DNA of 63,964 bases, filler included, from Intoshia linei (lineage: Eukaryota > Animalia > Orthonectida), in NCBI GenBank assembly GCA_001642005.1. It is 8 parts of 8 records of this genome, joined end to end, with 100 filler letters (N's around TTAATTAATTAA, not from the genome) between each part and the next. Parts side by side here need not be neighbours in the genome. Positions count along the whole stretch, not along the records: positions 15,294 to 29,084 come from LWCA01000996.1; 7 more parts are not named here. One strand, 5' to 3'. A model generated the notes under the pieces. It was not told the origin of the DNA, searched no databases, and saw only the letters and a list, made by a program, of their open reading frames with translations. Within the stretch, counting starts at the first letter, position 1. Every line of letters begins with the position of its first letter. This document shows positions 642 through 30,443 of the stretch, one piece after another. Position numbers and translations under genes: made by a program.

Positions 642-2029
642 ATTTAGACGAAGTCTTACCTATTTATTATTTTTATAATTTTTGATTAATATCAAACTAA
701 CAAAACTTACATTATGTCACACACAAAAAATACTACATAGATTCACGGCATTATTTTTTTTAAAAACTAATTTAAAGTTGAGGGGTGACCTAAAATTATT
801 ATAGTAATATTTTATTTTTTGATGAAGTGATCCTATATAATGATTAATTTTGTATTTATTATGAAATTTTCACCAAAAAATAATTATTATAAAGTGCTGA
901 AACAAAGAATCAAAGTTTTAGGTTTTTGATATATAAAAACCATTTACGTTTGGTCGATTTATTCAAAAACTGCCTTTAAATTGTTGTAATGACATCTCAG
1001 TGATGGCAGCCAACTGGATGTAATTAATGATTTTGGTTACAGTGATAACAACCATATTTAAGTGACTCAGAGCTATTTTAGAGCAGAGTACTTCTTGGTG
1101 TATAATGCAATGAAATCCAACCAGAGGATGACTTACGAAATTTGAAAAATTGGCTATAAATCTTTGAATTTGAATTCAACAGTAGTCAAAACCCAAAATA
1201 ATTAGTCTAGAAATATATTTTAAAAAACAAAATGTACACCGAATATGATAAACTAACCAAAGACATTAAATCCGTAGAAAGGACTATAAAACAATATTTT
1301 AATAAATTTTATTATTATAAGTTATTTATTTAATTATTAATATTTATTAAGTTAGTTATAAGTTATTATTTTATTGTTATAAGTTATAATATGTTTTATA
1401 AAAGATAATTAAAATAATGTCCCGATCGAATATTGATGTTTATAAATTTAGATGAAGCTATATTCTTTATGAATACACGAAACGTACATTACAATTTTGT
1501 AGACGCACATTATGAATACATCTTGAATACGTGGAACACCTTAACAGAGGGTAATGATAAAACTCATTTTTGTACTAATCATTTTTTTGTATTTGTCTGA
1601 ATATACATAACGTACATCAAAATAGATCGAATTAGGAAAATTAACAAAATTTTGACAATTACTAATATTCATTACTGTACTTTTCACATACAATGAGAAA
1701 ACAAAAGTTGAGAAACCTAAAAGTTACGCTACAAAAAATATCTATAAAACATTCAGTCTACAAAGCACATCAAAACTCACATAGCAAATCCATATTCATT
1801 TACTCAAATTGAAATGTAAATTTTGCATACAATTGTAATGTTTACCTTAGTCTGTAATTTATACTCAAAAAGTGGTGCCGAAAGGGAAAATGAACCAAAC
1901 CAGAGTTCATATTCAAACTAAAAAATCCGTATGGCAACATTGGTTTACGTTGCATTCTCAGTACAACATTGAATTGAGAATTGATAATAATCAACTAAAA
2001 CATTTCATAATATACTAATTTAAAATTGA

Positions 2030-5000
2030 ATGATTTCAAGTAGATCTACTATTTTTTGTCTTTTTCATGTTTTCCTTACGGTGGCATATGGAGACATTGA
2101 TTTGGGGAATATGATTAAATTGTGCGATAATAATTTTGAAGAAACAGTCTTGAAACATGAGCACATGCTCATCATATTTTGTAATTTTTAATATTTGTTG
2201 GTTTATTTAATTTTATAGACTCTGAATCTTGCGACCATTGTAAAGAGTTGATGCCAAACCTCGTAGCAGTGGATAACATAATGCGGGAAAAAAATCACCC
2301 ATTTTCTCTAGCGTATTTTTTATCTTTAACAATTTTTTATTTCATTTCAGAGTGATTAATGGAGCGGAATGTAAAACAACAGAAGAAAAATATGTTACGA
2401 CAGGATACCCTACAATTTTGTATTTTAATCAAAACGTTGATGATTACCAAGAATATAAAAGTTTTTCATTTTTATTCTTTGTTTACATTTTTTAGATGGT
2501 CGTGAAATAGACGATTTTATCTTGTATATTAACAAAAAATTGGGAGATTTGATCAATACAGTTACTGTTAAACACCTGCTGAATACATTGCAGACTAAGT
2601 CGTTTGTTGTAGTTGCATATTTTAAGGTTATTTTAGGCCATGTTTTACACTTTGTTTGATTACTATTTTATTGTGTACAATTTTCCATATTTTGCAATGT
2701 TTATGCATTTATTTGATAACATTTTTATTAGATTATATTTAAAATACAGTAATTAAATTTTATCGGATCAATTTGTTATTATAAATTTATAATAGTTTTA
2801 ACGTTTATGTTTTAAGTGTGTGTATTTATGATTGTTTTAGGTGTTTGATAATGAGTACATTAATGCTTTGAAAGTTTATGCATCTACCCACGAATCAACT
2901 ATCATTTATCATGTCAAAGAAGATTTGTCAACCTCAAATATTGACATTTCAGATGAAGGGATTTATGTTATCAAAAAGGTTACTAATATTTGTTTAAAGT
3001 CATGTATTGGGATAGATTTTCTATTTTTGGGAAATTTTCACTATTTACGACTGTTGTCATTTTTAAAATAATTTAATTTAGACTAAATATAATTGATTTT
3101 TACAAAAATTCCGGTTTCAGTTTCAAGAAAAATAGTCCTTTTTAACTTGGGGCGTAAATGACAAATGAATAAAATTGACCGCTTTATTTTTTATGTAATA
3201 GGAACTATTAGGAATTTTAATTTTTTTTCAATTTCAAGGTTATTGCGTAAATTTTAAAATATACCAGTTTTATAATTTTTTTGTATTGATTTTAATGTAA
3301 TTGATTATGTATAATAGGGGTGTTCCAAAATTTTATAAATTAGGTCCGAATACTGATAAAGTTGCGTGTGATAGTTTTAAGATAATCGTGAAAAGAAGAA
3401 AAATTTTTGAATGACCAAACATGACGAACGCCACAAGACCACTCAAAACATAACTACATAATATCATCGTAACATTTCAGTAAATAAAGTTATATTTTAG
3501 TTTTTGTAGAACATTTTTGTATGAAATTTTTAAATTGGCAAGCTCTTTCACAAAAAATTTTTCTTCTTTTCACGATTATCATAAAACTATCACACGCAAC
3601 TTTATCAGTATTTGGACCATGAAATTTTAAAAAAAAGTATAAAACATCACACCCCTAATGTATAATTTTCTATTTAATGTAGGTCTTTAACTTGAGTTAA
3701 CCAATTTGTCGCATGCTGTCCATATTTTACAGAGTTGTTCACTTATATATGCACTTTTTGAATTTTCAGATTATTTTTTTAATCAAACCTTAAAGAGGAA
3801 GGTTTTTAGAGTTTTTTTTTTTTAGCACTTAAAGGATAATTTTCATATAATTTTTTTATATTTTTATTTTAGTTTGATGAGCCTATCGAAGTATACAAAA
3901 GTGAAATATCTGTTGAAGCTGTTAGCAAATTTGTTGAATTCCATCGAATTCCTCATTTTGTTATTTTTGATATGGACGTAATTTTAAAAATATCTTAAAT
4001 CTATAAATTGGTTTGATGTCGGAAACCGTCTGAAAATAAGGAATTTTATATATACAGTCCGACCCTGCAAACCTCGGTGTGGCATACTCGTGTTTTGGGG
4101 CAAAAATGTTATATATAAACAATAAAAATAAAATCATATATATATATAAAGTATGAGTATAATTTCCATACTGATGACTAAACTTTAGTCTTTAGTTTAA
4201 TACTTCCATTCATAGAGCATAATTACTAGGTTACGCAAGATTTTGAGGATGCTGTTAAAGAAGTTATGTGAGCATTAAAATAAGCATCATTGTGATTTAT
4301 TTTGAATTTCTTTTATTTACAACAAATTATTATTGACAAGTGATTTTTTTGAGTATTATTTATAGCTATGCCAAAAAGAAGAAGCTAAAAAATAATCTTT
4401 TTATAATTGATTAAAAAATTTACTATAATTATGTAAATTTTTTAATGATACGATTTATTTTAAAATTGTATTACAATACACTTGTTAAACTTAAACTAAG
4501 TCTATTATTAATTCATTATAGGGATGCGCGAACGCAATCCCATCAGTCATAAATTGTAAGCCCAACAATGCACCTTGTGCAGAGTTGTAGGGGTCAATCT
4601 GGCGATGTGCAATGCTAACCTCGCCCTAGTACCAAGGCCCTCTTGTCCTCCCCAGTACCGCTCCAGGTAAGTGAATATTATGTTTTATAAATTGCTTAAA
4701 TTGAATATTCATAATGTTTAATATAAAAATTATCATAATTTATTCACAACAAAACTTTTAATTATGGTCAAAATAAAAGATGAAACCTATAATTACGGAA
4801 TTTGTTGTTTGAGTATTCGGTCATTTAATATTAATTTATAGAAAAAAACTTATTAATTTGATTTTTTTAACGATTACAACTTAAATTATAAAAATTTTGA
4901 TAAATTTTATATTATTTACATTACTATTGATATTTAGAAATGTTATAAAACTTTATTTGTTTGTATTATTATTATACATTTCAATAGTAATCTGCACAAT

Positions 5001-8000
5001 TCGACATTTTGTAACTTACGATGTTTTTGGGTTTAGTATGAAATATTAACTATTTGTTCAACATGTTCACCATTTTTTAACTCGCCATCATTTTTTTTTC
5101 AAAATTCAAAACAAATTATGTGTATGAATAATTTTATAAATAAACTAGGTTGACTGTTATGTACTACATACAAATAGGACCTATCTCTACCGAGGGCACA
5201 TTTTTATTATGCTTAAAAAATAAATTCACGTTAAAAATCTAATTTAAAATTCTTATATGCTATTTATAACAATTTTAGGATTGGACTGTTTTCCTTTATT
5301 TTTAATATTATACACATTCTGTCTAATAAATTAAAAAAAGGGATAACAATTGTTTTTAAAATTCTTTACGTAAATGTTAAAAAAAATTAAAATGGAATAA
5401 TTCACTTTAAAGTAATAAGTAATGATATGATGGTTCCACCTGCAACAAATTTGGGAACTACTTCTATCACATTCTGTCTAATAAATTAAAAAAATGTGAT
5501 AACAATTGTTTTTAAAATTCTTAACGCAAATGTTTACAAAAAAATTAAAATGGAATAATTCACTTTAAAGTAAAAAGTAATGTGATATTATGGTTCCATC
5601 TGAAACAAATTTGGGAAACACTCCTTTAAAAGATTTATAATAATGAATAGTAGGATTTTGAACGTGAATTTATTTTGCAAGTATAATAAAAATATGCTCT
5701 CGGCAGAGCTAGGTCTTGTTTGTACGTAGTATATAACAGTCAACCTATTTGTTATTATAATTTGTATTCATTTAATACAAACTATATTCCATTTCAAATA
5801 AAGTAGAAAGTGCATCTGCATCGAAAAAATTGACTCTAAGAGAAACTATTTTATTTACAGAAGTATCCAGGTTAAATGTCACCAATTAACAATATGCAAT
5901 TTATTTAAACCAGGTGTATACAACCTGCGGGAAATCCATGTGATCATAATGTAATATATCATTTTACTTCAAATTGAAAAGTTTAAATCAGATTTTATTC
6001 AAGGCAATGGGCAAGTGTTTTTATTAAAAAGTTACATTTTTGACTTTTTTTGGCCACTTTTTTAAAATGGATTTAAACTTTCTCAATGTCAAGTAAATTT
6101 TGTGCGGTCGTAGTATCAATGAGTGTTAAAATATCTTTGTTGTTGAATTGGTGGAAAGATTGTGCACCCGTCGTTTAAACATTTGTTAGCCAATATTACT
6201 AAAAGGTTAAACAATGAAATTTAATAAAAATATATGGTTATTCGTCACTTATAGAATCTCTTAAAATCGAAGATCCCGTTAATGAATTATAGGTTTTTAG
6301 TATGGAATTCACTGAAAATGAAGTAATATTACATTATTGTAATTTCTGTGATATATATCTATTAATTTATGATGAAAGATATTATTGAAATCAACTGTTA
6401 ATCTAAAAATTCGTTATTAAAAGTAGAAAAGTATATCTATGAACCAGAGGAATGGAATAAAAATGATTTAAACCTAGTAAAGTCCATACATCTTACATCA
6501 GGGTGGATAACCTTTTGTGGGCTACAATATATAATAATTCAATATTAAAATGATTATTATGAGCATTATAGTAGAAAATTTATAAAACGGTGTAAAAGTT
6601 GAAAAGTTTAAAAATAAATAATGTACACCTTTACTCAGAAGACCATCAAAATTATTCTGTAGGCTACTGGTTGCCGACTCCTCCTTACATGATCATATTA
6701 ATTATTCTCATGGATGAAAAAAATGATGTTCGTTATTATTTTAATGTTGTTATGTAGTTCCAAATGCCACTGACTATTCTTAACATAATAAGATAAATAA
6801 GAAATCTAACATCGTAATGTTTAATACAAATTAATTAAGCAAAAAATTAAATTGAGCAATGATTGAAATTTGTCGATTTAGAAAATTGGATTAGTAAGTT
6901 GTGATTAATTCTAACAGTCAGGGAAAATTATAAAATAATTAAAAAAAATTAATAGTTTAAAATTCTGAATACTAAAAAATATTATATTCAATAAAAAAAG
7001 AAAATACTAAAATGACTTTATAACACGGTCCAACAAAATCTAAAAATGCGAGTTTGTAATTTTTTTATGTTTTTCTAGTGCATTTTTTGCAGCGCTACCT
7101 TGCTGGAGTAAAATTTCGCCCACCATACGAATAATTTTTGTAGCATCACATATTAATTTAAAAAGTACCTCCGTCTTAATTCCTCTCAACGGACCATTCT
7201 ACAACTCAAAATAGATTATACAACCCATATGTATAAAAACAATATTGAATTTTAAGTATAAATACATACTTGTATTACAAGTTGTACTTGTACTAGGTTT
7301 GAATTGTTAATATATTATTAACAATACATGTGTCATTTATTATTGCAAGAAGAATTTGTATTTCATAATTGAAAAAAAATTTAGCTGGTTGAATCAGTTT
7401 TCCAATCTGGAATAAACCATCATTTTACATGTTTTATACCATTTTCACATGATAAAAAGAACAACAGTCAAGAAATTTTGAAGAAATTGTCTCCAGATTA
7501 CCACGCTGAGGTATTTAAATGTAGAATTGTTAATTTTATATATTTATTATATACATTTTACCAAAATACAATCATCTTTCACTGATAAAAACGTTTTTTT
7601 AAACTATATAATGTATATTTGCACGTGTCATTGAAAAAATCTGAACCCTGGTGTATTTTCTCCCGCAATTACATATATCTAGATTATATTTTTGATGATG
7701 AATACGGAAGACGAAAAATTGACTCAAGTAATAGATCATTTTGGAATACAAAAAGACGAATTAAAATGCATGATTCTTAAATTGACTGAATCGTCCCTTA
7801 TTCCATATCACATGGATAAAATGTTTGAAACTGAAGATGAAATTAAAAATTTTATTAAAGATTTTCGAGACGGAAAAATCAGTGTACTTTTTAATTTGAT
7901 TTGATTATAATTTTGATATATATTTAATTTATACATTTAGAAATTTATCAAGTCCGCTGAATTGGAGGATGATTGGGATGCAACAAATATCAAACAATTT

Positions 8001-15100: not shown

Positions 15101-15607
15101 CCCGGGAAAAATAAAAAATTTTTATTCATATATAATATAGAAGTATTAAAAATTTTAGAGACCTTAATTAATTTTAGAAACAAAAAGAAATTTNNNNNNN
15201 NNNNNNNNNNNNNNNNNNNNNNNNNNNNNNNNNNNNNTTAATTAATTAANNNNNNNNNNNNNNNNNNNNNNNNNNNNNNNNNNNNNNNNNNNNCAATCAT
15301 AGATATGTAATTTTGGCTTTACATTTAACTCCAAATAAACTAAAATTAAAGTAATCGAACATGACTAAATTTCTCAATTTTCATGTCTCAATTTTTTTCG
15401 GGAAATTCCGGGAATTTTGTCCCGGTTTTTTTCCCGGCACAATCACTACTTGCAATATGCTGAAAATTTTCCTCTATTATTAAAACAAATAACCTTATAT
15501 TGATAAGCCATTAAAACATTTATTTTTGAGATTTTTTTTGTTTTAATTTTTTTTATCAAATCTGTCAATCCTAATCCACAGATATAATCCACGTCATCTT
15601 TGTTAAT
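12105..15607 (-). CDS. PRKD: Protein kinase D family Ser/Thr kinase; kinase domain 12105-13915 complete, PH-like exons upstream, 5' end unresolved
   Basis: Spliced minus-strand exons give [104 protein letters not shown]...PPL*. Candidate PH exons 14943-14998 ([11 protein letters not shown]) and 15494-15607 ([11 protein letters not shown]) are lower confidence and do not join directly in phase to the kinase exon. Confidence 0.88.
12859..13020. mobile_element. hAT MITE in a PKD intron (related copy 29817-30111; termini also near 55410 and 63350)
   Basis: CAGTGGCGATTCTA / TAGGTTTGGCTCTG ends; TSD TTAGTGAA / TTAGTGAG. Confidence 0.75.
15038..15448. mobile_element. hAT-like MITE with TTCCCGGGA subterminal repeats, interrupted by a gap
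   Basis: TAGTGATTGTG / CACAATCACTA termini; multiple TTCCCGGG motifs; related fragment at ~16525-16610. Confidence 0.6.
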
Positions 15608-17342
15608 CTAAATGAACTGAATTCAATAAATAATCTTTTGATTTAAATAAACAACATAAATATTTATTAGGGTTGTTCACTATATCACCAAATAAAAACT
15701 ATTTTTGAGTATAAGCCTCATTTTATTTCGAAATCAGTTGTACCATAATTTTTTTAAAATTTTGAACATTTTGTTCTGCCCGACTTAAACGTTTTTTATA
15801 TATTATTTTGAAAGTAAAGCTTCATTGAGTAAAGTATTTTCATTTTTTTCCCTCATTTTAATTTATTAAAACAAAGAAACTAATAATACAACTACACTCA
15901 CCTCTCACGAATCTACGTAACATTTTACACATCTTCACATAATTATTATGAACATTAATCCATTAGAATAAATACGGTTCAATTTTTTAGCTCGGCTTCA
16001 AGAGAGTTTATATTACTTTTTTTCATTAAAATGTATTTAATACGTAAATAACTGAATTTTGAAATAGCACTCAGATTTTCATAGTTGAAATATATTTTTA
16101 GTTATTATAAATTTTTGAATTTTTAAATTTGACCAATATTACAAAAAACCCTTTTTATGGAAAAAACGTCCTGTGAGGTTAAATATTAAAATTTTTCACT
16201 ACATATATAGTATATGTATTAGTGGGTCCTATATTAACCATATCCAATTAAAAAATTAATGTTGATGTTAATTAAGAAATATAGAAACTTGTGCGCGAAA
16301 ACCTTAAAAAGATTAAATGTTTTCACGGTAATTTTTTCTAAAATTATATTTTCTAGGTATTTTTAAGTACCCTCTTAAGCGTGATATAGGGTATTTTCAA
16401 TAAAAATATTTTTTAGTAAAAAAACGAACAGCCCTAATAGGCATAGATTGAAAAATACTAAAATTTTGATACAATAAATGAAGAGTCTAAGAAAAGCCTG
16501 ATACAGGTTGTCATAGAAGATCATTGGTGATTTTGCCGGGGGAAAAAATTGGGATATTTAATAATTTCCGGGAATTAAATTTCCCGGGATTTCCCGAAAA
16601 AAAATGAGACATACATGTATTTGATTTATGTTTGTTATTACTATGAAAATATGATGATATTATAATATTTAAAATTTACTATTTCAAAAATCCCACCACT
16701 AATAAAATTTAATAAAAATCCTATTTTACGAAATCTTATGAAAAAAATCCACTTCATCAAACTACAAATAAAAAATCTAATTTTCCAGTCGTTAACGGAA
16801 AAATATCCTTTTTCCAATACTTTTTTTAAAAACATCTTATTCCAACCACAAATTACTAACGCTTAAGGGAATTATCCTCTTTTTCCAATATTATTTTGGA
16901 ATATAATATGGTATCCAAAAATAATTTTTGAAATTCAAAAAAAACACTAAAATAAACCACCCTAATATTTATATCTAAAATAAATACCTAATTTTAATAA
17001 CATATACATTAATGTAATACCATATAAATTGACCGAGGGGCTGAATAAATATTTATTAGTAAAGGTTTATTTTATTAGTAATAAGTACAATGTTTACGGG
17101 GACCAAGGTATGAAAAATATCCCAATAAAAATTGCAAAATTGATCTTTTTAATAAAAAAAAGTGGACACCCTACTGTTATACTTGCTTGAAATTTCAGAT
17201 AAAAACATTACTTTGGAAATACTGAATTAAAAAATCAATTTTATTGAAATATGGATATTTTAACAATGCAATGGTTCAGAGTGTGTCGTATAATCACTTT
17301 TTTTATAATTTGAAAAAAACTAAAAATGAAATAAAATTTTAC

Positions 17343-17549
17343 CTCTGTTTTTAATTTAGTTTCCATTTTATCAATTTTTTCTTCCAGTTCATTTTTTATA
17401 ATATTGGCTAAGTTAAGACATCTACGATAATTGGAACGATCCTTACATACACCGACAATGAATTTGATAAAAAAATATCCAAATATACATATTCCAACAA
17501 TATAACCTTGTAGGGTTTTGTAAAAAATTTCTATTATGTAATTCAACAT
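17343..17549 (-). CDS. Putative first exon encoding a transmembrane segment and a coiled-coil-like stretch; possibly the PKD 5' end or a small orphan gene
   Basis: MLNYIIEIFYKTLQGYIVGICIFGYFFIKFIVGVCKDRSNYRR...NELEEKIDKMETKLKTE ending at a GAG|GTAAAA donor. Confidence 0.45.
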
Positions 17550-18269
17550 TCAAAATAAACAATTCCTATTTATTTACAATAAATAAAAACACATCAATGC
17601 AATCTAAAAAAGAATTCAATAAAACCGACGATAGTTTATTGTGAATTATGTACTGTATGTTTGAAACAGTAGTTACTACATATACAATGTATACATAATG
17701 TGTATAATCACTGATTAATTATACTGTGTATAATACTGATTATTAATAACTAGAGTAGAGTCTACTCAGTAGACTAAAAAGAGAACTTTTGAAATGATGA
17801 AACGAGTAGAAAAATAATAAAATGTATCATGCTCATTTTAATAATAAAATATATAGCTAAGTGCATTAGCTTTATGACATAATCGTGTTAAAACTGTGTT
17901 TTGAATCTTTTAATTAATTTAATTTAATTAATTGTATGTGAAATTGTTAAAAAACATTCATATTTGAAAACGATCTCATGCATTTAATTTCGAGCATTTA
18001 CAAAATAAAAAGTGAAATAATAAAATATTATAAAATGTAGTTGATTCATATTTATACAATGCGTTTGAAAACGAAAAATTTAGATAAAAATCATTAATCA
18101 AATGAAAAAGAATAACGGATATTTCCAAAATAAAATTGACCTTTGATAAATATCAACTAAATTAAATTTAAACCACTAGAATTATCAACATTTTGTGATT
18201 ATAATCAGTTATTTATTTATTTATAATATAAAAATAAAAAAAATCAATGAAAAAAATTCCGAAAGAATG

Positions 18270-19062
18270 AATTATATAAATTTTGACCCATATGTCTTTA
18301 TTCGAAATGTATAGACGTACACTGCACATTTTTTTTGAAATTGTAGAATCAATATTTATTTTAATCGAAATATTTTAAAAATATTGGTTGATATATTAAA
18401 AATTATTTTTCACCGGGAATGTGTAGATTTCTGCCGTTGAAATTTTGTATTTATATCAACTGGAATAAGCTCTGTCAGAATAATTTTTTGTTTTAATAAA
18501 ATATTTCGTAAAAAAAATATATGAATACTAAAATGCTTTTTTGACCGTGAAGTCGTCACTTATTCAGATTTAAATTTTTATGTGTGTTAACATGATACAA
18601 CTCTACCACCTGTAAATTTTTTGAATTTCTAGGGCTGTCTTCAAAAAAAGGAAGTGTAATTTGGGGTTTGGCCCTGAAGATATAATTTTTTTAAATTTAA
18701 ATTTATGATAATGTTTATGATTTTAAAATCCGTATCAGCGTATATATTTTTTTAAATTCTCGAACTCGTTTGATTTTCAAAAAAAAGACAATTGGGATAT
18801 ATATTTTTTTAAATTCTCCAACTCGTTTGATTTTCAAAAAGAGGGACAATTTTTTAAATTCTCCAACTCGTTTGATTTTCCAAAAGGGGGACAACAGGGG
18901 TTTTTGACCCGTAAGATGTGCAATTGGGAGGTTAAAATTTATAATAATATACGTTTCGGAAAAAACTGTAATTGAAATGTGGTCTTTAAAAAATTCTAAG
19001 ACAGGTAGTTATTTAAATAAAGCATAACACACACAGGCACACAAACAAAATTCGCGTAGCAT
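18270..19062 (-). mobile_element. Non-autonomous Helitron-like family copy with three ~40-45-bp internal tandem units
   Basis: Reverse complement of the family at 31718, 48870 and 51207 (GCTACGCGA...GTGTGTGT...AATAACTAC...CCACATTTCAATTAC); tandem AAATTCTCCAACTCGTTTGATTTTC units at ~18750-18890. Confidence 0.7.
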
Positions 19063-20497
19063 ATATCACCTATTATATGTTATATAGTATTTTAAAGTTA
19101 TTAATTGAATTCCGCTTAATGTTTTTTGAGAATTGAGAATTTTTAATAACGACATATTATTTTTCACATATCAATGCATACTCTCTGCTTATGTGCTATT
19201 TTTTTTGAACAGCCCTAATATACATATTATATATAAGTCTTATATGGTACACACAAAAAAACGAGTAAATTTTGAAAAAATCGAGCACTATTAATTAAAA
19301 AACAAACACATTTACATTCCAAGCAATCATGCAACATTTATATTAAATCGAGGAAATGTCATTTAATTTAGTGTAAAAGAGTATTTCGATCACTTTTCAC
19401 TTTCTAACCGGTGTGTCGTGACACTTTTGTGTGTCGCCAAACTTAAAATTTTTTTTAAATTCCATTAACAGACAATACAATTGGAAAAAATAAAAATTCA
19501 AATCAAAGATATAGTGATGATGATAAATTTTACATAGATTATTTTCAGATTATTATTAGAAAAAAAATGGTTCAACTATATTTATTAGTCAATTGTTTAT
19601 TTTTTTGATTGGTGCGTCGCGAAATTTTTTGAGATTGAAATATGTGTCACCAACCAAAAATGGTTGGAAAGCATTGCTTTACTCGGTTTTGTCTACTCTA
19701 ATAATAACTGTAAATACTAATAATAACTGGCAAGTAAAAGTTAGCGATTTTTGTCTTACAATAATTTATTATAGTATAATTTATATCATGGTCTAAATAA
19801 ATCATATGACAATAAATATTTTTCTAATAATTATAATTAGACTAATTTCACATATTTGTTTTTGTCAAAAAAATTATTGCAAATACTACTAACTACAAAT
19901 ACAAGTACTGCCTAATACAAATCAAAACAAATATTAACTACCTGTACTGTAATACATATACTACTGAATCAGTAATATTGACTTAATCGTTAAAGTTTTG
20001 ATGAATCTACATTGTAGATTCAAGATTTGTGGATTCTACAATTTGTGGATTACATACAAAGTTAAATACCAGTACTGATAAATTTATAGTGTCACTTTCA
20101 ATTTCAATTTAAAATGAATGAATTAACGTTTAATTATCGATTATTAAAAATGTATTGGAAAAAATTTAAATGTGTAATATATCAACAAAATTCAATTTAA
20201 AAGTTTAAAATAACATAGTAGATTTTGAATTTAATTTTAAAATATACATCATTGATAGGTCTATAAAATTTTATGTGTTAGTTTTGTTTAATCATAAATT
20301 TATATTTTTAACCAAAATCAATATTATAAAATGTCTATTATACTTTAATCAAGGCATATAATGATTAAAATTCTTTACATGTACAAGTTTAATAATAAAT
20401 CCATGCCAAATCATAATTTATGATATCGAATCGCAATTAGAATAATTTAAAATTAATACCTTTAAATTCATCTAGTCAAAAAAATTGTTATTTTAAA

Positions 20498-23400
20498 ATG
20501 GTAAAGAGTAAACTTTTAAATAGAAAAAATCATAAAAATGTGATTGCAGAAGAATTTAATATAATTAATGAAAAATTGACGTATTTTTTTGTTAAATCAT
20601 CCTAATATTTTTTTTAGATTCAGAAAAAGAATTGTTCTTTTTCTTAATAGTTCTCCATTTTTAATTTTCACTTGCTTTATTGTGTTGTTGGATATAATCA
20701 TCGCCATTTCTCATATCATTATTGATCTTAATTTGATGAAAGGTATTTCATGTTATTTAAAAATGAAGAATTCTAGAAAAAGGGTTATTAAATTTTAAGT
20801 TGATTTTTTATAATCAAGGATGCTACAAACCTTATCTCATCAAATTAAATTAAATGTATTGTTGATTTGTTTAGCGAGTACAAAACAGGTGCAGGAGAGC
20901 ACTTTTTGTATGCCAAATTTTATTAAATGATATCCCAAATACACTTCAATATGTATAATGATATTTTTATGGTAATGACTTAATTTCTAAAATCCATAAT
21001 CCAGCCTATTGGCATAATACGTCATGTTTGAAATTTTCATATGGTTAACGGATACTGCAATCATTTATATAATATTTAATAATATTTATATATATAATTT
21101 TTTCATTTTAATCCTTCTTTTAATATTATCAAATTTATGATACCATATCATGAGGAATTTTTTTCAGAAATAAAATTTGCGAAAAATGGCCGTTACTGAC
21201 TTGTAATTTTATAATATGACTTGTAATAATTTGGGAACCTACTGAGCCTAAACTACTAATTCAGATTCAAATTTTCATCCATGAGTCAATAATTTTAATT
21301 AATATTATTATAAAAATAAATATGTTATATTTTTAATTTATCTCAATAGAGTTAACCAAATTATTGGTACATTTCATATTTTTTAAAGGGCCACTCCAAA
21401 TATTGGCTATATTGACCTACAATTTGTATAACTTTTTTTTATCATCAGGGAAATTATCATAAATAATATGATAATCATCTTGATTACACCTAAATTTCGT
21501 TCTAAAATAATAGATTTTAATTCATTTACTAGAGTCTAGTGCAAAGTTCCCAAAAAAATATATTACGACAACTCTAAAAGTATACAAATATTTTTAGTAA
21601 ATATCAATTAGTACAAAATAGTAAATATGTTTATTATATTATTATAACAGCCATTAAAAAATGTTATCTTTTAATATTACTAATTTTATTTTCATTATAA
21701 ACCCTTCTTTAATATAGTAAACACTCTAGTATACAAACAATTGTAAATTTATGATTGTTCTTTTTTGTATATATACGTTTTATTGTCTATTAAGGGTTAA
21801 TAACATTTACATTTATTAGAATCCAAAATTAATCCGAATTTCAAGAATATATTAATGAAATATCAAATACTAAATTAAATTTAGAAAACTAATGTTTGAA
21901 ATTCTAATTTAATTTTAAATTTTTTCTTAAATCTGCGGCCCCTCCGACTCTGAAGGCCCCATGTGAGAAACACTAGACCAGTGGTTCTCAACATGTGAAG
22001 TTTTACCCACGAGTGGATATTTTGATACATTTGCATTTTTCATGGGTTTTCATTTTCAAAAAATTTTGAATAAAATTTAAACTACAACAACGAAACTAAA
22101 AGTAATACAACGTTGTTATTATTTTTATATTTATTACAATTCTTTGCAATATTGGTAAAATTCACCTGAAATATGTTTATAAAGTACTGATTCTGTTAAT
22201 TATTGATACATAATTAATATTTTTAAGTATTTATTAAATTGGTACTGATTATATATCAGGGGTGGCCAACAGGTCGATCCCGAAATTTTTTGAGTCGATC
22301 ACTGCAATATAAAAATTAATCTTTATACAAAATTATATTTTAAGAAAAATTTTAAAATTAAAACATACATGTACTTCAAATAAATATTATCTACTTGAAT
22401 TAGAAAATAATTTATTAATTATGCGAATGTATATTTACTGAACATGGTTCACATGTTCTTAACCGTTTGTTGGTTAATCATTTGATATGACATACTTATT
22501 ATTCTATTTATCTCGCACATTACAATTAGCTTAAAAAAATCAAAACAATACCATTTTCATATTGAATGGGAGATGACTAATTAATATCCATAATATTGGT
22601 AACATAATGATCCTAATTGATTACTGATTAACATATCAAAAATATGTTGACTTTTACTTGACCTATTCTATTTGATGTCAACTTGAAATTTAAGATTAAA
22701 AGGCATGTTTTGTAATGTACGTACATGTATACTACCATACATGGTGGTCTACATTGTATAGCAGGTAATTTCAACCGATTATGATATTAATATTGATAAC
22801 TTACAATTTTATTTATAGTTTATTTAATTTAGAAAGTATGATAAAACAATCTGCACATTTACAAAACCTAATAAAAGCCGTGAAACAATCACGAAATGCA
22901 AAAATTCCTCAAATAAATTTAATTGACATAACAAACCAAGCTAAACAAACAAAAGACGATATAATCAGCATGTACAAAACTTTTAAAAACAAATTGAAAC
23001 CTGAAATGTGCATAAACACGTTAAAAGATGTATTAACTGAAAAAATAAGCATAAAACATTGTACAGACATGACTGAATATTTAAATTTGAAAAATATACA
23101 ATATTATAATGTAAATAATTGTACACGAGAAAATATGTACAATATTAACCCTCACAAATTTAAATCCATTACCAAATTTTTATACAAGAATGCTACTTAT
23201 GAAAATCAAAATATTACAACCTGTGATGATTATATTGACGTCATTCTTAAATTCGTCAATGATAATATAACCATTAATCATGATTCTCTAGAATGGATTA
23301 CTCATGTGCTGCATATTACTAGTATTGTTCTTTTAGGGTGTCTTTTATTTACGGTATTTTATTACTTGTTTCACATGCAAATTTCCTCTTTTAAGATTAT

Positions 23401-24868
23401 AAGATTGATAGTTATCATTATAATGGTTCCTAGAAATGAAATTAATTAATTAATAAAAATGTTTCAACGAGGTTTTACTATTGGGGTATCTTTAAAAGTC
23501 TAGTAAGTTTTTACTTAATTATAAATAAATATTATACATGTAATATGATTTTTTTTCACCTTCAGAGTAATTATTATTATTGTAACAAAATTTTTAATTA
23601 AATTTTAGACTTTGGTGAAACTATTTGCTATTGGTTGGACTTTTTTTAAAGGAATTGTCGAGGTAATATATTGACTTTTTTTACTATATTAATTAGATTG
23701 TTGATTTAATTTTCCTCGTTACTTCATTTTCTTTGGATGTATACTTTTTGGCAGATTCCAATACGAATGATAGTGAAAAAACTGTTGCAATTTTAATTGT
23801 ATTGTTCTTTTGGAGAGTACTAAGAGTTGCAAATGGTAAATTTCACCAAATTTAAAATTTAAGATAAAAAACAATATATAATAAATGAAAAATTCAAAAT
23901 AAGCATAGCAAACTTTTTTGGTCCTACTACCAATGTTCTGGGCCAATCTGATATAACATGGAAATATTTAATTTTAGTCAAAAAATTAATGTTTTTGATT
24001 ACACTTGATTATAATAATTATTACGAAGATAATGGTAAATGAACTTAGACTACATTACATTAATAATGAAAATACATTATTAATTATGAAATATTTATAA
24101 AAATTTATAAAAAAAAATTAAGCCATTAATTAGGAATGTTAGTTGCCGCAAAACAACGTCATGAATACAGAATAAATTTACAACAACGAGTTACAGAAAG
24201 AGTCCAAAAGAAGCTACACAGTTTATTGATAGAAGATGAATCAAAATCAGTAAACATTTTAATTTCACAGAATATGATAACACTAATACAGGGTGGCTTA
24301 ACTATTACGTAGACCCCAAATATTTTTCAATAAATAAATCTTTCCCAAAAAAATGAGAATTTAAAATTGAAAAAAATCAATTAAATTTTTTGGTGGCCCA
24401 CAATAGTTGTGGCAACATCAAGATAGTGAAATAAATCACCTTTTTTACCACATGTCGCTGCAAAGGTACAATTTTTTTTAATTTTTTGGGTGAAGAATGT
24501 TGATTTTTGATAATTACTTATAAATAGAATGAAATTAAAGCACTTCGAAATCTATGCATAAAACATAGAATAAGCATATCCTCAATGAACAATTGCAAAA
24601 AAATAGGTAAAATACATTTACGATGAATAACTTTAATAATTTAGATTTAAAAGTAAACAACAAAGCACTGTCAGCGTTAACTAACGCAGCACACATTTCA
24701 CTGCACATGGCCATGTCTTCAAGTTTCTTGGTTGCTCAAGGAAGAAAAAAGATTGTGAAACATTCCGTGAGCTTCAACATAAACAAAGAGTTAAACTATA
24801 TTTCAGACAACGTTTATTCACGTCATTTGTCCTCTTCACAACCTCAATTTTCTAATGATGCAGATTAA
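20498..24868 (+). CDS. Voltage-gated proton channel (Hv) family protein, divergent, 8 exons
   Basis: Exons 20498-20580, 20618-20742, 22833-23353, 23609-23662, 23697-23835, 24134-24249, 24528-24606, 24645-24868 join in frame; S0/S1 FRKRIVLFLNSSPFLIFTCFIVLLDIIIAISHIIIDL, S2 LHITSIVLLGCLLFTTLVKLFA, S3 EIVDLIFLVTSFSLD, S4 LIVLFFWRVLRVANG, then coiled-coil-like tail; no pore or phosphatase domain. Confidence 0.85.
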
Positions 24869-24978
24869 ATTGTATTTTAAAAAATGTACAAAAATATTTA
24901 TACAAAATTTAAAATTTAATAACAACAATATATTTACAGTGGTTGGTAGTTACACAAATAATTGTATATTTACATTTC

Positions 24979-26455
24979 TTAACGGTTGTCCAACATTAAA
25001 AAATCTTTGGCTTCAAAATTTAAAACTACTAATTTAGTTTCTTCTGTACCTATTAATGAATTACATTTTAATCAAATTTTAAACAAAGCATTACCATTTC
25101 TACTACCCATGGCACAAACAAGCTTGGTTCTACTACAACGCAATCTCCATACAACTCCGCCATTTTCTCTCGTTACCAATTTGACTAAATCACAGTAATA
25201 ATTTCCAGTATATAAATTCCACAATTTCACTGTTCCATCATCGGATGCGCTAACTACTTTGTCACCTACAATTTCCATACATGTTATCGCGCTAGTATGT
25301 GGTTTACGACCTAATTTATCATTATAATTATAATTGACAAAATAACTTGAAAATACATGCAAACATCGACCGGTAATTAGGTCCCAAGCTCTCAGTGTTG
25401 TGTCAGCATTAGCCGAAATTAAAATATTTTTAACAATTTTGAGTCCACTTGTCAAGGAAGAATGGCCTACCAAAACATGCATGCAACATCCATTCACTAC
25501 ATTCCATATGCGAATACAAGTATCTAAAGATCCACTAACAATCAATGAGCCATCAAACTAAAAGTTAAATAAAAATAATCACATAAACATCTACTTCAAG
25601 GGAGTAGATTCGATTAGTGTGGCCAGTGAGGACGTGGATAATATTTTGTTTGTTGTGATTCCATACCCGGACGGTACAATCGTAGGAACCACTAATGAGG
25701 TATTTTTCAGTGAATTGTAGACAACGTACAGCAGCAGTATGACCTGAAAACACACTAAGGCATTCTCCTGTCGAAAGCGACCACAATCTCAAATCTGCGT
25801 CTCGTGATCCGCTCATTAGTCTATCTTTGTAAAGTGCCAAGCATCGAACTGTGGATGAATGGCCCAAAAGTACAAATTTGCATTCATAATTATGCAATTT
25901 CCATATACGAATTGATCTATCCGTTGAACCTGTAGCAAGCATTTCAGGGTTCATTTTACAAGCCCACACTCCGCCTGTGTGGCCCAGCATTGTGGCCAAA
26001 CACTAATTTTAAATATAAAATTGTAAATTGATTACAAGACAAATTTACCTCCCCTGTATTAGCAGACCAAACATTAACAGTATTATCATCCGATGCACTA
26101 ACAACCAAATCTCCGCAATATTCAAGACACGTAATCACGTGGTCATCGTGTCCTCTCATTAACTAATAAAATGTACAATGTAAAAATAAATAAAATACAT
26201 TACCATTTTATCGGATGGTTTACAAGATTTCCAATTATATTCAATGTTTTTGTAACGAACATAATTTTTAAGGTAAAATTGATTTGTGGGAATACTATTA
26301 TTTTTACAATTTGAAAGTTTTGCATTTGTAACATAAATAATATCATCTATTGAATTTCTATCCACCGGAAAGCCTTCCATTAAACAAAAATGCTTCCATA
26401 TCACATCAGAACTGGATACAGTGTTCCAATATTTACTAACTCGGAGAACTGAAAG
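24979..26455 (-). CDS. FBXW7: F-box/WD40 protein FBXW7/SEL-10/Cdc4, 5' exons not located
   Basis: End of F-box (LRVSKYWN...IWK), MRGHDDHVITCL, GHTGGVW, GHSSTVRC, SGSRDADL, GHTAAVRC, GHTNRIYSL, GGVVWRL, GSRNGTEETKLVVLNF; the three phosphodegron-binding arginines are retained. Confidence 0.94.
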
Positions 26456-28429
26456 CTAAGAAATAAAATAAGTTAAGAGGTAAAATATAATTTTATATAA
26501 TAAATAATCTAGTAGGTATGCTGCAGACTGTTTGGGTATAATTTTTAAGTATTTAATTTTCGTAATCCGCACTGTATTAAAACCTAAGTGTAATAATACT
26601 GCACCGCATCAAACTGAATGTTAGTTTTTGTTTTTTTGCATCCGCTGTACCATGGTTTTTCAACCGGGATTACGATCGCTAAGGGGTCGCGACTCGCCAG
26701 AAGTTGGAATTATTTATATATCTAAAAAATGTTTTGGAATTTTATAATATCAACTAGAACATTGGTTCCCAAAAAATATATTGATGGCCCCCCTCACAGT
26801 ATACAAATATTTTTAGAAAAGATCAATTAGTACAAACCTTTATTAAACCATAAATCAAATATCGTAAGGGTTAATATTATTTACATGTTATGTTAAATTT
26901 ATTATAATCCTAAATTAATCCGAATTTCAAAAATATATTAATAAAATATCAAATACTAAATCAAATTAATGTTAACGATTCTAATTTAATTTTAAAAATT
27001 TTCTTAAATTTGCGGCCCCCTTCAGACTCTCTAGGCCCCCTGGTGGGGCCAAACCCCCCATTTGTGAACCACTGAACTAGAACACACAGACAGATACACA
27101 AACAAAAATCGCGTAGCCTTTTATATAAGTTAGGATTTGATTTTTCAAACTTTATGTGATACAGTAAATGTCGATATAAATCACCAATTTCGGTTACATT
27201 TAAACCATATTTCAATTTTAGTAAGTTATAAACACGGCCTTACTTGATAGTTTAATTTTGACGTAACAAATAGTTGATATTTAAAAATAAAATTTTCAAT
27301 TGGTCATTTTAGAAAAAGGCAGTTTCCATTTTACACAAATTTCCACCATTTTGCCTACCCTGCGAGAGGAGTCTCGCAGTACTCGTAGTCTAGTACTAGT
27401 AGTCTCGGTACGGTAGGTTAAATTCTGGATGTATAAATCTAACAAAAAATTAATATATGCCATGATACATACATCATATGTATATAATGAGACGATGCTA
27501 AAAAATTTTTTTAACTCATAAAACAAAAATATAATATAACACTTTAATTACAGAGTATAAGTTACAATTTGGCAAATGTAAAATTTTTTATTTATTAGTA
27601 ACAAATTTAAACTGAAATTATTATTTTAATAGTTATTTACATGCCTAGTACAGAATTTTCACTTTCCATAGATTTCTACGAACCCGATGGGTGAGTTCTT
27701 TTCAACTTCGAGCTATATATACTAATTGTTTATATTTTAATATACGCAATATATTTTTAATTGTTTTTAACGCAAAATTTTATTTTTTAAAAGATAATTA
27801 CATTAAATATTACAATGGATAGTCCTTCAGAAATAAAAATGCTATTTTTAATTGCAAATCCATCAAAAAATGAAAAATCGCATAATATGTTTATATATAT
27901 TAACGAAGAGAAATTAAATGAAAATTTCGAATCTGTTCTAAAATTTTTCTATGCATCATCTAAAAATTACGAAAATTAAAAAAGGAAACTAAAATTACGA
28001 AGAAATCGAATATTTTATCTAAAGCTTAAATATTTCAGTATATCAATAATGCACCAAATAATAAATATACACTATATCGCAGTGTTAGAGTTATAATGTT
28101 CTATTTGACTTTTTGACAAAAATGATGTTTTTGATGAAAAATGTTGCAAATCATATCTTTTACATTTTTCCAAAAAATTAAGCTTGAAAACGTATTATTT
28201 TATGAGATAACAAACATTTACTGGTTCAATTACTAAATCTCGACTTGATAATTCCTTACAAAATTATCAAATTCCTATTAAAAATAACCTCACAAATTCT
28301 AAAAAGAAAGATATTAAAAGTATATTAATCAAAATATATGCATTCAAACGACCATGTAGTGGGACGATTATATTTAATCAGAATAATCTTAAACTCAACC
28401 ATATTTACTGAAATCCAACCATTTTTACT

Positions 28430-28600
28430 AAAAATCAAAATTTACCAACCTTTAAAAGAAAAATCCACTTTTACAAACCCCTAAGGAAAAATCCCAATTT
28501 TACCAACCCTTATTGGGAAAACCAACTTTTACCAACCTTTAATGGAAAAATCGAATTTTACCTAGCCTTAAGGGCATAATCCACTTTTACCAACCTTTAA
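28430..28600. repeat. Minisatellite with ~29-30-bp unit
   Basis: About six degenerate copies of AATCCACTTTTACCAACC(C/T)TTAAGGAAA. Confidence 0.75.
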
Positions 28601-30443
28601 CCTTTTACTGTCCGGTGTTCCATTAATGAAACACTAGATTTAATACAATATAGTGACTAAGTTATATCATGCTTCATTATTATAAAGATGAAATTTGGTA
28701 AATTAAATTCTCCGCTTCTTCATGGAATTGACATATTTTTATTTGCATAATTAATTATATATACAATTAACGGTTGAATATAGCTGAAAAAACCAGTAAA
28801 AAAATTCATATTTTGAAATAATATTAAAGTTAATTTAATAAAATAAATTTGATTTTTTACTCTAATGATTAAACTCCAGATGAATTGTAGTATCAGACAA
28901 AAAAAATTACATGAAAATAAGTACACAGTTAATAGTTATGAGTCGATAAAAATAGGTGCTCCATTAATGGAACACTCGTAATTAACACGTATTAATGAAC
29001 TAATTTTTTTTCGAAGGTTATTATTGTTAGTTAGCAAAATTTATCGTATATTCTTCTCAAATTTATTTCAGAATCGTGTCATTTNNNNNNNNNNNNNNNN
29101 NNNNNNNNNNNNNNNNNNNNNNNNNNNNTTAATTAATTAANNNNNNNNNNNNNNNNNNNNNNNNNNNNNNNNNNNNNNNNNNNNATTCGAGTCCTTTTGT
29201 TGTTTATAGAATTTTATTATATAATTAATAAATAGTAAATTTTATAAATTTACAAATATTCTGAATTTCCAGTGAAAGCTAATATCAAGATTCGATATGT
29301 GATTTTGTAAATTACTTATTTAATCTAAATTTATTTTGATACGCTTAGTAATATCCATTTTATAAAAAGCGTGAATAGTATTTTAGGTAATATTCATGAA
29401 TAACTTTATGTTCATTTTGATTTATTATTAAAATTTCATTCGGTCCGCGCCTGACCAAACCTTAATATTATGATTTACAAATTTATATATAATACCCTTG
29501 AGGTAAATGGGGAACATTGCCGGGGTATACTTTTTCTATAAAAAAAAGTGGGACACTCTATTGTACAGTCGTATCCTGTTAACACACACAAAAAATTTCA
29601 ATCTGAATAAGCGACGCCTTCCCGGTCAAAAAAGCATTTTAGTATTCATATATTTTTTTACCGAAATATTTTTTGATACCAAAAATGTGAAATAATTAAC
29701 GGTCCGAAAATTAAAAAAAACTACACATTACCGGTGAAAAATAATTTTTAATATATTATCAACCAATATATTCTAAATTTTTGAATAAATAATTAAAAAA
29801 TAACAATATGAGTATACAGTGGCGAATCTACCGTACCAAATGCCCTCTTTTATTTAATTTTTGTAAAATGGGACCTTATTTGATCAAATTGAGCATTATT
29901 TAACAAAATTATATTTTTGAATATTATAACTTATGTATAAGTATTATTATAATTATTATAACATAAGTATTTTGTATGCTAAATTTAAAATCTCATCTCA
30001 AGACTTTTAGTGAGGTGGATAAAGGCTATATGACATGATGAATTGTTTGTTTGTGTTTTTAGGGGCCTATTTTTAATTTTCGATGACCTCGAGCTTGCTA
30101 GGTTCGGCTCTTAAGTATACATCCTATAATTTAAAAAAATCAAATCAAAAAGCATTTATTTTTTTTGTAAAATTAAAAAGTCGGCAGAGATAGACACTGT
30201 TTATACCAAGTACATAATAATCAAACTGATTTATAAATAAAATGACTAATAAAAAATTCTCGACCTTTAAAAAATATTTTGCGGTTGGGCAAATCTATTC
30301 CGCCATTACCAGCCTATGCACCTTCTATAAGTAAAAAAATCCTTTAGGCGCGTGGTATTTGAAAATTGGATACTAATTATATACCAGGATAACTTATAAT
30401 TATACAAGGTTGATTTTATACAATTAATAATATATACGCGTAG

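What the first reader, a model, noticed from the sequence alone, without database searches (positions are those of the whole stretch)
20498..24868. Atypical Hv proton channel: two-arginine S4, altered S2 countercharges and a ~150-aa S1-S2 ectodomain
Seen: the S1 selectivity Asp is kept (VLLD, equivalent to human D112) and S4 ends W-R-x-x-R-x-x-N-G. The first Arg of the RxWRxxR signature is Phe (LFFWRVLR). Aligned by eye on the conserved S2 Lys, the F150 and E153 equivalents are Leu and Thr. One exon inserts ~150 residues with 4 Cys and 4 sequons (NCT, NAT, NIT, NIT) between S1 and S2. Established: canonical Hv1 has three S4 Arg and a very short loop; some molluscan Hv paralogues have two Arg and long S1-S2 loops. 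Inference: a weakly voltage-dependent or leak proton channel, possibly regulated through an extracellular domain.
Basis: partly seen in the sequence, partly recalled or inferred. Interest (0 to 1): 0.8.

Follow-up and report, generated by a model that had tools for sequence, protein, structure and literature searches.

The report
Large-loop, two-arginine Hv channel of Intoshia
The gene is real and encodes the orthonectid parasite Intoshia linei's copy of an already described spiralian branch of voltage-gated proton channels that lack the first S4 arginine and carry a big extracellular S1-S2 loop, so it is a new member of a known kind, not a new kind of channel.

Summary
The piece is a whole 13,791-bp contig of Intoshia linei (Orthonectida). 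The gene at 20498-24868 (+) is GenBank OAF66231.1, a "hypothetical protein" that UniRef auto-names Hv1.

HMMER alignment to human Hv1 confirms these equivalences:
- S1 Asp kept (D53 = D112).
- R1 is Phe (F298); W300, R301, R304 and N307 are kept.
- F150 is Leu and E153 is Thr; K157, E171, D174 and D185 are kept.

A 152-residue loop with 4 Cys and 4 sequons sits between S1 and S2. Its exon lies in the longest open frame of the contig (226 codons, against at most 144 in shuffles).

The type is already published. Aplysia AcHv3 is a proton-selective, weakly voltage-dependent, leaky channel, and large-loop Hv sequences without the S4 proline are reported from Annelida, Bryozoa and Nemertea. Orthonectids nest within annelids. 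Intoshia's nearest S3-S4 relatives among 1.84 billion proteins all lack R1. A metagenomic relative shares all seven checked intron positions and phases.

Hv membership is well supported over TMEM266 or VSP. Proton conduction and weak gating are inferred only. The GenBank model adds a doubtful 19-residue exon between S4 and the coiled coil. An in-phase cryptic acceptor could give a short-loop isoform. Interest is modest.

The parts
20498..20580 (+). Exon 1: start codon and short cytoplasmic N-terminus (27 codons + 2 nt)
   Evidence: Exact match to P0001 residues 1-28; GT donor at 20581
20618..20742 (+). Exon 2: S1 helix with the selectivity-filter Asp D53 (GAT 20691-20693) and D64; ends in phase 1
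   Evidence: HMMER alignment to human Hv1 S1. Same exon end and phase in relative L004
22833..23353 (+). Exon 3: the 152-aa extracellular S1-S2 loop (about 22833-23290), with 4 Cys and 4 N-x-S/T sequons, plus the first half of S2 (H230; L240 at 23342-23344; T243 at 23351-23353)
   Evidence: Lies in a 226-codon open frame, the longest on the contig, against at most 144 in 200 shuffles. Translation; positions. Relatives L004 and P0022 also keep a long loop continuous with S2
23290..23291 (+). In-phase cryptic AG acceptor inside exon 3. If used, it would join S1 directly to 'EWITH...' and give a very short loop
   Evidence: Read from the sequence; same phase as the 22833 acceptor. No evidence that it is used
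23609..23662 (+). Exon 4: second half of S2 with K247 (= K157), and the S2-S3 turn ending in E261 (= E171)
   Evidence: Colinear weak match in L004 at 4949-5002
23697..23835 (+). Exon 5: S3 (D264, D275) and S4. The motif F298-F-W-R-V-L-R-V-A-N307 is at 23805-23834. The exon ends in phase 1
   Evidence: The only PDB hits are Hv1. In the 1.84-billion-protein search it returns itself plus R1-less exon fragments. Same exon limits in L004
23978..24034 (+). Doubtful 57-nt in-phase cassette exon (e5b, 19 aa), present in the GenBank model between S4 and the coiled coil
   Evidence: Maps to P0001 residues 308-326. It appears as a 19-residue insertion against the transcript-derived relative P0022. Human Hv1's S4 runs without any insertion into the start of its C-terminal helix in the P0022 alignment. 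L004's coiled-coil exon aligns directly after its S4 exon
24134..24249 (+). Exon 6: helix continuing from S4 (the first part of the coiled coil)
   Evidence: Aligns to P0022 and to L004 6478-6591 with identical exon limits
24528..24606 (+). Exon 7: end of the coiled coil (the 'EIKALRNLC' motif)
   Evidence: Aligns to P0022 and to L004 6792-6872. The same motif occurs in Eisenia and Lingula large-loop Hv sequences
24645..24868 (+). Exon 8: C-terminal tail and the stop codon. It has no detected relatives
   Evidence: Exact match to P0001 residues 392-465. No Pfam hit

Best explanation

Architecture:
- A pore-less four-helix voltage-sensor domain that is itself the conduction pathway.
- A short cytoplasmic N-terminus.
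- S1 carrying the selectivity-filter Asp (D53).
- A 152-residue loop facing the outside or an organelle lumen, probably N-glycosylated and disulfide-bonded.
- S2-S3 with most of the acidic and basic network kept: K247, E261, D264, D275.
- S4 with Trp and only the second and third arginines.
- A C-terminal helix in register with S4 that should form the dimerising coiled coil.

Shown here: homology, residue equivalences, exon structure, and shared architecture with relatives.

Inferred, not shown:
- It conducts protons selectively through D53 pairing with R301 or R304.
- With one gating charge fewer, and with the inner countercharge E153 replaced by Thr, it gates less steeply and opens more easily than Hv1.
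- Whether it leaks as AcHv3 does is open.

My odds: Hv-family large-loop member about 0.9; functional proton channel about 0.7; AcHv3-like weak gating or leak about 0.4. The confidence given for this explanation (0.6) is for the whole statement, that is, membership plus a working proton channel with reduced gating steepness.
For: - Identity: P0001 is OAF66231.1 of Intoshia linei, on a 13,791-bp contig that equals the piece.
- Against PDB, Hv1 is the best and only significant match: 5oqk at 1.6e-4 and 3wkv at 1.2e-3. Ci-VSP scores 4.6.
- BLASTP to the 646-aa long-loop transcript protein P0022 gives E 7e-16. P0022 itself hits Hv1 at 2.8e-8 and Pfam Ion_trans.
- Six of the seven non-self hits to exon 5 among 1.84 billion proteins carry LLWRxxR, that is, no R1. 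The seventh, P0002, is a spurious repeat protein. They score 35-36 bits, against 14 bits for human Hv1.
- Metagenome contig L004 shows colinear exon-by-exon matches and identical intron positions and phases at all seven junctions checked. This includes a long exon holding the loop plus the first half of S2.
- The published annelid (Eisenia) large-loop Hv sequence shows the same S3-S4 and coiled-coil motifs.
- The review states that such channels occur in Annelida, Bryozoa and Nemertea without the S4 proline.
- Orthonectids are recovered within Annelida.
- AcHv3 is proton-selective with about 60 mV per e-fold gating.
Against: - There is no functional data for any non-molluscan member.
- Intoshia lacks the S4 proline, which the AcHv3 authors suspect underlies its weak gating. 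They also note that single Arg-to-Ala mutants of human or mouse Hv1 do not leak.
- The gasket equivalents V50, L240, F267 and L268 are all hydrophobic, so a gasket-type leak is not predicted.
- Pfam does not recognise the protein, and similarity to Hv1 is low (24 bits).
- If exon e5b is real, S4 and the coiled coil are uncoupled.
- I could not build a tree with named Hv1-Hv4 and TMEM266 sequences.
Confidence: 0.6

Rival explanations
1. It is an ordinary, steeply voltage-gated and non-leaky proton channel. Loss of R1 and the S2 changes only shift or modestly flatten gating, and the loop is a passive spacer.
For: Single S4 Arg neutralisations in human or mouse Hv1 still gate and do not leak, as cited. 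F150A alone gives no closed-state leak. The gasket stays hydrophobic, and there is no helix-breaking proline in S4.
Against: The only tested R1-less natural channel, AcHv3, gates very weakly. Intoshia also lacks the E153 countercharge.
Confidence: 0.25
2. It is a non-conducting voltage sensor or otherwise repurposed VSD protein (TMEM266-like in function), kept for signalling or as a partner of another protein.
For: NCBI auto-names a Lingula protein of the same large-loop type 'C15orf27 (TMEM266) homolog'. The review warns that some Hv-derived proteins may have lost channel function. The sequence is highly divergent and has no Pfam hit. Relative P0022 even has Gln at R2.
Against: It keeps exactly the residues TMEM266 lacks: Asp at the D112 and D185 positions. 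It also keeps W, R2, R3 and N214. AcHv3 shows that this architecture conducts protons.
Confidence: 0.12
3. The long loop is not part of the main product. The in-phase acceptor at 23290-91 is used instead, giving a short-loop protein, or exon 3 upstream of S2 is an annotation artefact.
For: An AG acceptor in the same phase sits just before the S2 coding sequence. No RNA-seq was available.
Against: A 226-codon open frame in 24% GC DNA is far beyond chance. The 22833 acceptor has the stronger T-rich tract. The transcript-derived relative P0022 keeps a long loop, and in L004 the loop is one open frame continuous with S2. The resulting linker would be shorter than in human Hv1.
Confidence: 0.04

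Closest known systems
Annelid, bryozoan and nemertean large-loop Hv channels (e.g. Eisenia fetida TSA GIUK01058977), described by sequence in Chaves et al. 2023 (PMC10377628)
   Same: - S1 Asp.
- A very long S1-S2 loop.
- No R1 and no S4 proline (xxWRxxR).
- An 'H.LH..S' start to S2.
- The E153 position is neutral (Gln in Eisenia, Thr here).
- An S3-S4 stretch of the same length.
- The same 'NG..V.AK.R.E.RI.LQ.R' and 'EI..L.NLC' coiled-coil motifs at the same spacing (read by eye).
   Different: - The Intoshia loop is about half as long (152 aa against about 300) and unrelated in sequence.
- The C-terminal tail is much shorter.
- Phe rather than Leu at R1, and Leu at F150.
- Orthonectida is not listed in that survey.
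Aplysia californica AcHv3 (Hv3 family), PMC10911540
   Same: - Short N-terminus (35 aa there, about 30 here).
- Large S1-S2 loop.
- R1 replaced by a hydrophobic residue.
- A coiled coil straight after S4.
- It is the only functionally tested member of this architecture: proton-selective, Zn-sensitive, about 60 mV per e-fold gating, and leaky.
   Different: - AcHv3 has LPWRxxR (with proline); Intoshia has FFWRxxR.
- AcHv3 has 980 aa, a 299-aa His-rich loop and a 535-aa C-terminus; the Intoshia GenBank model has 465 aa.
Human and mouse Hv1 (HVCN1; PDB 5oqk, 3wkv)
   Same: It is the best solved-structure match. D112, D123, H140, K157, E171, D174, D185, W207, R208, R211 and N214 are all conserved.
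   Different: - Hv1 has R205, F150, E153 and E119.
- Its S1-S2 loop is about 12 residues.
- Its S3-S4 linker is 3 residues shorter.
TMEM266 (C15orf27/HVRP1), PMC6392501
   Same: A VSD-only protein related to Hv1, with a coiled coil after S4 and a longer C-terminal tail.
   Different: - TMEM266 has Val and Met at the D112 and D185 positions.
- It has three S4 Arg plus K213 and D217.
- It keeps F149 and E152.
- It has no long loop.
- It is reported only from vertebrates.
- It shows no proton current.

Membership tests
Voltage-gated proton channel (Hv) family | VSD-only protein: four TM helices S1-S4 and no S5-S6 pore domain | tested here: met
   Hydropathy shows S1 and S2-S4 only, and nothing hydrophobic after S4. 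Alignment to the Hv1 VSD covers 27-69 and 220-307
Voltage-gated proton channel (Hv) family | Acidic selectivity-filter residue in mid-S1 (human D112) | tested here: met
   D53 aligns to D112
Voltage-gated proton channel (Hv) family | S4 signature RxWRxxR (R1, W, R2, R3) | tested here: not met
   W300, R301 and R304 are present, but R1 is F298. This matches the modified xxWRxxR of the unconventional branch
Voltage-gated proton channel (Hv) family | Closer to Hv1 than to other VSD proteins | tested here: met
   PDB phmmer: Hv1 1.6e-4 and 1.2e-3, Ci-VSP 4.6, no Kv or Nav hit. Exon 5 alone hits only Hv1. No TMEM266 chain appeared among the PDB hits, so that comparison rests on diagnostic residues
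Voltage-gated proton channel (Hv) family | C-terminal coiled coil continuous with S4 | tested here: inconclusive
   Met if e5 splices to e6: the alignment to P0022 and L004 is then gap-free. It is broken by 19 residues in the GenBank model
Voltage-gated proton channel (Hv) family | Proton-selective, voltage- and delta-pH-dependent current | not testable with these tools
   Needs electrophysiology
Unconventional / Hv3-like large-loop Hv channels of Lophotrochozoa | [quoted passage not shown] | tested here: met
   152 residues (70-221) between S1 and S2
Unconventional / Hv3-like large-loop Hv channels of Lophotrochozoa | First S4 arginine missing | tested here: met
   F298 at the R1 position. 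The nearest database relatives have Leu there
Unconventional / Hv3-like large-loop Hv channels of Lophotrochozoa | Proline before the S4 Trp (LPWRxxR), typical of molluscs, brachiopods and phoronids | tested here: not met
   F299. The review says the proline is also absent in the annelid, bryozoan and nemertean forms
Unconventional / Hv3-like large-loop Hv channels of Lophotrochozoa | Much enlarged intracellular domains | tested here: inconclusive
   The N-terminus is short, as in AcHv3. The C-terminus after S4 is about 140-158 aa, longer than the roughly 60 in Hv1 but far below AcHv3's 535
Unconventional / Hv3-like large-loop Hv channels of Lophotrochozoa | Groups with this branch in a phylogeny that includes Hv1, Hv2 and Hv4 | not tested
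   Named reference sequences could not be obtained.
TMEM266 | Non-polar residues at the D112 and D185 positions; three S4 Arg with K213 and D217 | tested here: not met
   D53 and D275 are present, there are two S4 Arg, and Asn sits at the D217-equivalent position (definition)
Voltage-sensing phosphatase (VSP/TPTE) | PTEN-like phosphatase domain after the VSD; no S1 Asp and no S4 Trp | tested here: not met
   No Pfam domain in the C-terminus. D53 and W300 are present. Ci-VSP scores E 4.6

The most novel reading that the evidence does not exclude
In this extremely gene-poor endoparasite the large-loop, R1-less channel may be the only Hv gene retained. Its short, Cys- and glycan-bearing ectodomain may have been reshaped to sense the host environment. 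The in-phase 57-nt cassette between S4 and the coiled coil may be a real alternative exon that switches S4 to coiled-coil coupling (cooperative dimer gating) on and off.
Probability: 0.08. Interest if true: 0.6.

Novelty: new member of a known kind. Interest (0 to 1): 0.3.

Why it matters
It extends the large-loop, two-arginine Hv branch to Orthonectida, which the 2023 survey does not list. The protein is also invisible to Pfam-based channel counts: it has no PF00520 hit, so it was probably missed when Intoshia's 36 Ion_trans proteins were counted.

At 465 aa or fewer, with a 152-aa loop and no S4 proline, it is a compact natural construct. It could separate the effect of losing R1 and E153 from the effect of the proline in AcHv3. 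Retention in a roughly 8,700-gene parasite (figure from my own knowledge of the genome paper) hints that this branch has a basic cellular role. None of this overturns current understanding.

Tried and rejected
- Pfam on single exons and on the whole protein: no significant family.
- Word-index searches with the loop ORF, and with P0001 residues 215-307: nothing, or only the protein itself.
- ESM Atlas: nothing for the loop, and only weak Ion_trans fragment leads for exon 5.
- Rfam on the contig: nothing.
- AlphaFold2 without an alignment: P0001 mean pLDDT 43, loop alone 37. Both are too poor for any fold search, so none was run.
- BLASTP of the loop against the loop ORF of L004 and against P0022: only the 19 residues just before S2 match. 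The loops I could compare are not detectably homologous.
- P0002 in the big search is a spurious repeat-protein hit.
- The mixed alignment A3 misplaced two short fragments, so I did not use it as a profile.
- A tree with named Hv1-Hv4 and TMEM266 was not possible.
That joined step is left out. The only full-length protein used is the database entry P0001, which contains e5b.
- No contig looked human.
Full report
**What the sequence is.**
The piece (window 15294-29084) is about 25% GC. It carries a multi-exon gene on the + strand. I derived exon limits from GT-AG sites and reading-frame phases. A HMMER search of 1.84 billion representative proteins with exon 5 alone returned a 465-aa protein, P0001, at 100% identity. 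P0001 is GenBank OAF66231.1, 'hypothetical protein A3Q56_06040 [Intoshia linei]'. UniRef auto-names it 'Voltage-gated hydrogen channel 1'. Its only contig is 13,791 bp, the length of the piece. So the organism is the orthonectid Intoshia linei.

P0001 maps exactly to these window coordinates: e1 20498-20580, e2 20618-20742, e3 22833-23353, e4 23609-23662, e5 23697-23835, an extra e5b 23978-24034, e6 24134-24249, e7 24528-24606, e8 24645-24868.

**Check of the observation.**
phmmer of P0001 against all PDB chains gives only Hv1 as a significant match: human 5oqk at E 1.6e-4 and the mouse chimera 3wkv at 1.2e-3. Ci-VSP scores E 4.6. The alignment falls in two blocks, S1 (27-69) and S2-S4 (220-307), which flank the inserted loop exactly. 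Exon 5 alone also hits only Hv1. The equivalences are:
- Kept: D112=D53, D123=D64, H140=H230, K157=K247, E171=E261, D174=D264, D185=D275, W207=W300, R208=R301, R211=R304, N214=N307.
- Changed: E119=H60, F150=L240, E153=T243, R205=F298.

The loop (70-221, 152 aa) has Cys at 129, 146, 166 and 200, and sequons at N165, N189, N196 and N214. It has no hydrophobic stretch. Exon 3 lies in a 226-codon open frame, the longest on the contig, against a maximum of 144 in 200 shuffles. It is therefore coding beyond reasonable doubt.

**Two weak points of the gene model.**

*Exon e5b.* The GenBank model inserts a 57-nt in-phase exon (19 aa) between S4 and the following helix. BLASTP against the transcript-derived relative P0022 opens gaps totalling exactly 19 residues there. 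The multiple alignment shows e5b as an insertion absent from P0022, with L004's coiled-coil exon aligning directly after its S4 exon. Read by eye, the distance from the S4 'NG' to the 'EI..L.NLC' motif is the same in the Eisenia large-loop channel as in Intoshia without e5b. From memory, it is also the same in human Hv1. I therefore regard e5b as a probable prediction artefact or minor isoform. Only RNA-seq can settle this.

*Cryptic acceptor.* An AG at 23290-91 is in the same phase as the 22833 acceptor and would give a very short loop. The long open frame argues that the long form is the main product. So do the relatives: P0022's transcript keeps its long loop, and in L004 the loop is one open frame continuous with S2.

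**Relatives.**
Six of the seven non-self hits to exon 5 are exon-sized ORFs from metagenome or read-archive contigs. All six read LLWRxxR, so they too lack R1. They need no gap in the S3-S4 linker, or in one case a single one. Human Hv1 needs a 3-residue gap and scores 14 bits against their 35-36. The seventh hit, P0002, is a spurious repeat protein.

P0022 (646 aa, from an RNA-type assembly) is a full-length long-loop protein. It matches P0001 at E 7e-16 from S2 to beyond the coiled coil. It also matches Hv1 at 2.8e-8 and Pfam Ion_trans.

Contig L004 (9.9 kb, marine metagenome) carries a colinear set of exons matching Intoshia e2, e3 (the part just before S2), e4, e5, e6 and e7. All seven junctions I checked have the same position and phase as in Intoshia. 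They include a long exon that holds a Cys-containing loop plus the first half of S2 and ends at the E153-equivalent codon. The loop sequences I could compare are not detectably similar, except for about 19 residues just before S2.

**What is known.**
Chaves et al. 2022 showed that Aplysia AcHv3 is proton-selective. It has 980 aa, a 35-aa N-terminus, a 299-aa S1-S2 loop, and LPWRxxR in S4. Its gating is extremely shallow (about 60 mV per e-fold) and it has a proton leak.

Their 2023 review defines 'unconventional' Hv channels by a very large S1-S2 loop, large intracellular domains and xPWRxxR. It states that large-loop channels without the proline occur in Annelida, Bryozoa and Nemertea. Its supplement prints such sequences. 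The second Eisenia fetida channel shares with Intoshia the S2 start, a neutral residue at E153, the S3-S4 block, and the coiled-coil motifs (read by eye, not aligned by a tool).

Phylogenomics places Intoshia within Annelida. Intoshia and Orthonectida are not mentioned in the review or its supplement. No paper in the library pairs 'Intoshia' with 'proton channel'.

**Membership.**
Against TMEM266: that protein has Val and Met at the D112 and D185 positions, three S4 arginines plus K213 and D217, and is reported only from vertebrates. Intoshia has Asp at both positions and two arginines. Against VSP: there is no phosphatase domain, and the S1 Asp and S4 Trp are present. The canonical RxWRxxR signature is not met at R1, and the molluscan proline is absent. 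That is exactly the state reported for annelid-type large-loop channels.

One caution remains. NCBI auto-names a Lingula protein of this type 'C15orf27 homolog'. The deep relationship between this branch and TMEM266 is unresolved, and I could not test it.

**How it most likely works.**
Shown: a VSD-only protein with an intact Hv selectivity-filter position, W, R2, R3 and N214, most countercharges, and a helix after S4 that aligns to the Hv coiled coil.

Inferred: protons pass through the VSD, with D53 pairing with R301 or R304. One gating charge fewer, plus loss of the inner countercharge E153, should lower the steepness of gating and favour the open (up) state.

Against a strong AcHv3-like leak:
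- There is no S4 proline.
- The gasket equivalents V50, L240, F267 and L268 are all hydrophobic.
- Single Arg neutralisations in mammalian Hv1 do not leak.

Three of the four Zn2+-site positions hold possible metal-binding residues (H60, D64, H230), so Zn2+ sensitivity is plausible. The loop must face the outside or an organelle lumen. Its sequons and Cys fit that topology. Its function is unknown, and single-sequence AlphaFold gives no confident fold.

**Limits.**
That joined step is left out. The only full-length protein used is the database entry P0001. A tree with named Hv1-Hv4 and TMEM266 could not be built with the remaining quotas.

**Verdict.**
The identity as an atypical Hv channel is supported. 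The functional inference is plausible but untested, and somewhat weaker than for AcHv3. This is a new member of a known kind, of modest interest.

Noticed in passing
window 25072-26160 (- strand): A convergent neighbour gene, whose first WD40 ORF ends about 200 bp from the Hv stop codon. Its WD40-repeat exons have human FBXW7 as their best natural PDB match (E 3e-72), with Pfam WD40 hits.
   Followed up: partly
window 21546-21942 and 26765-27019: A dispersed repeat of roughly 400 bp, matched in segments at 79-92% identity. One copy is inside the unusually long 2.09-kb intron 2 of the Hv gene (the Intoshia median intron is 57 bp). The other lies upstream of, or within, the FBXW7-like gene.
   Followed up: no
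window 28402-28599 and 18748-18894: Tandem repeats with a 29-nt period (5 copies) and a period of about 45-57 nt (3 copies) in non-coding parts of the contig.
   Followed up: no
P0022 / loci L006, L007 (Logan DRR671686, DRR671684): A full-length long-loop Hv-like transcript of unknown organism. Its S4 reads LLLWQIVRMFNG, with Gln at R2, a position the 2023 review calls fully conserved. By HMMER alignment, E153 is Phe and K157 is Glu. It may be an Hv derivative that no longer conducts.
   Followed up: partly
L004 (ENA ERZ27292031 k119_268066), 352-7822: A marine metagenome contig (38.7% GC) with a complete large-loop Hv-like gene. Its intron positions equal Intoshia's. Its S4 is WRIARVTDG, with Asp at the N214 position, like D217 of TMEM266. 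The same S3-S4 type recurs in the other metagenome exon fragments returned by the searches.
   Followed up: partly
window 23978-24034: An in-phase 57-nt cassette with good splice sites that the GenBank model includes. It is either a prediction artefact or an alternative exon that would break S4 to coiled-coil continuity.
   Followed up: partly
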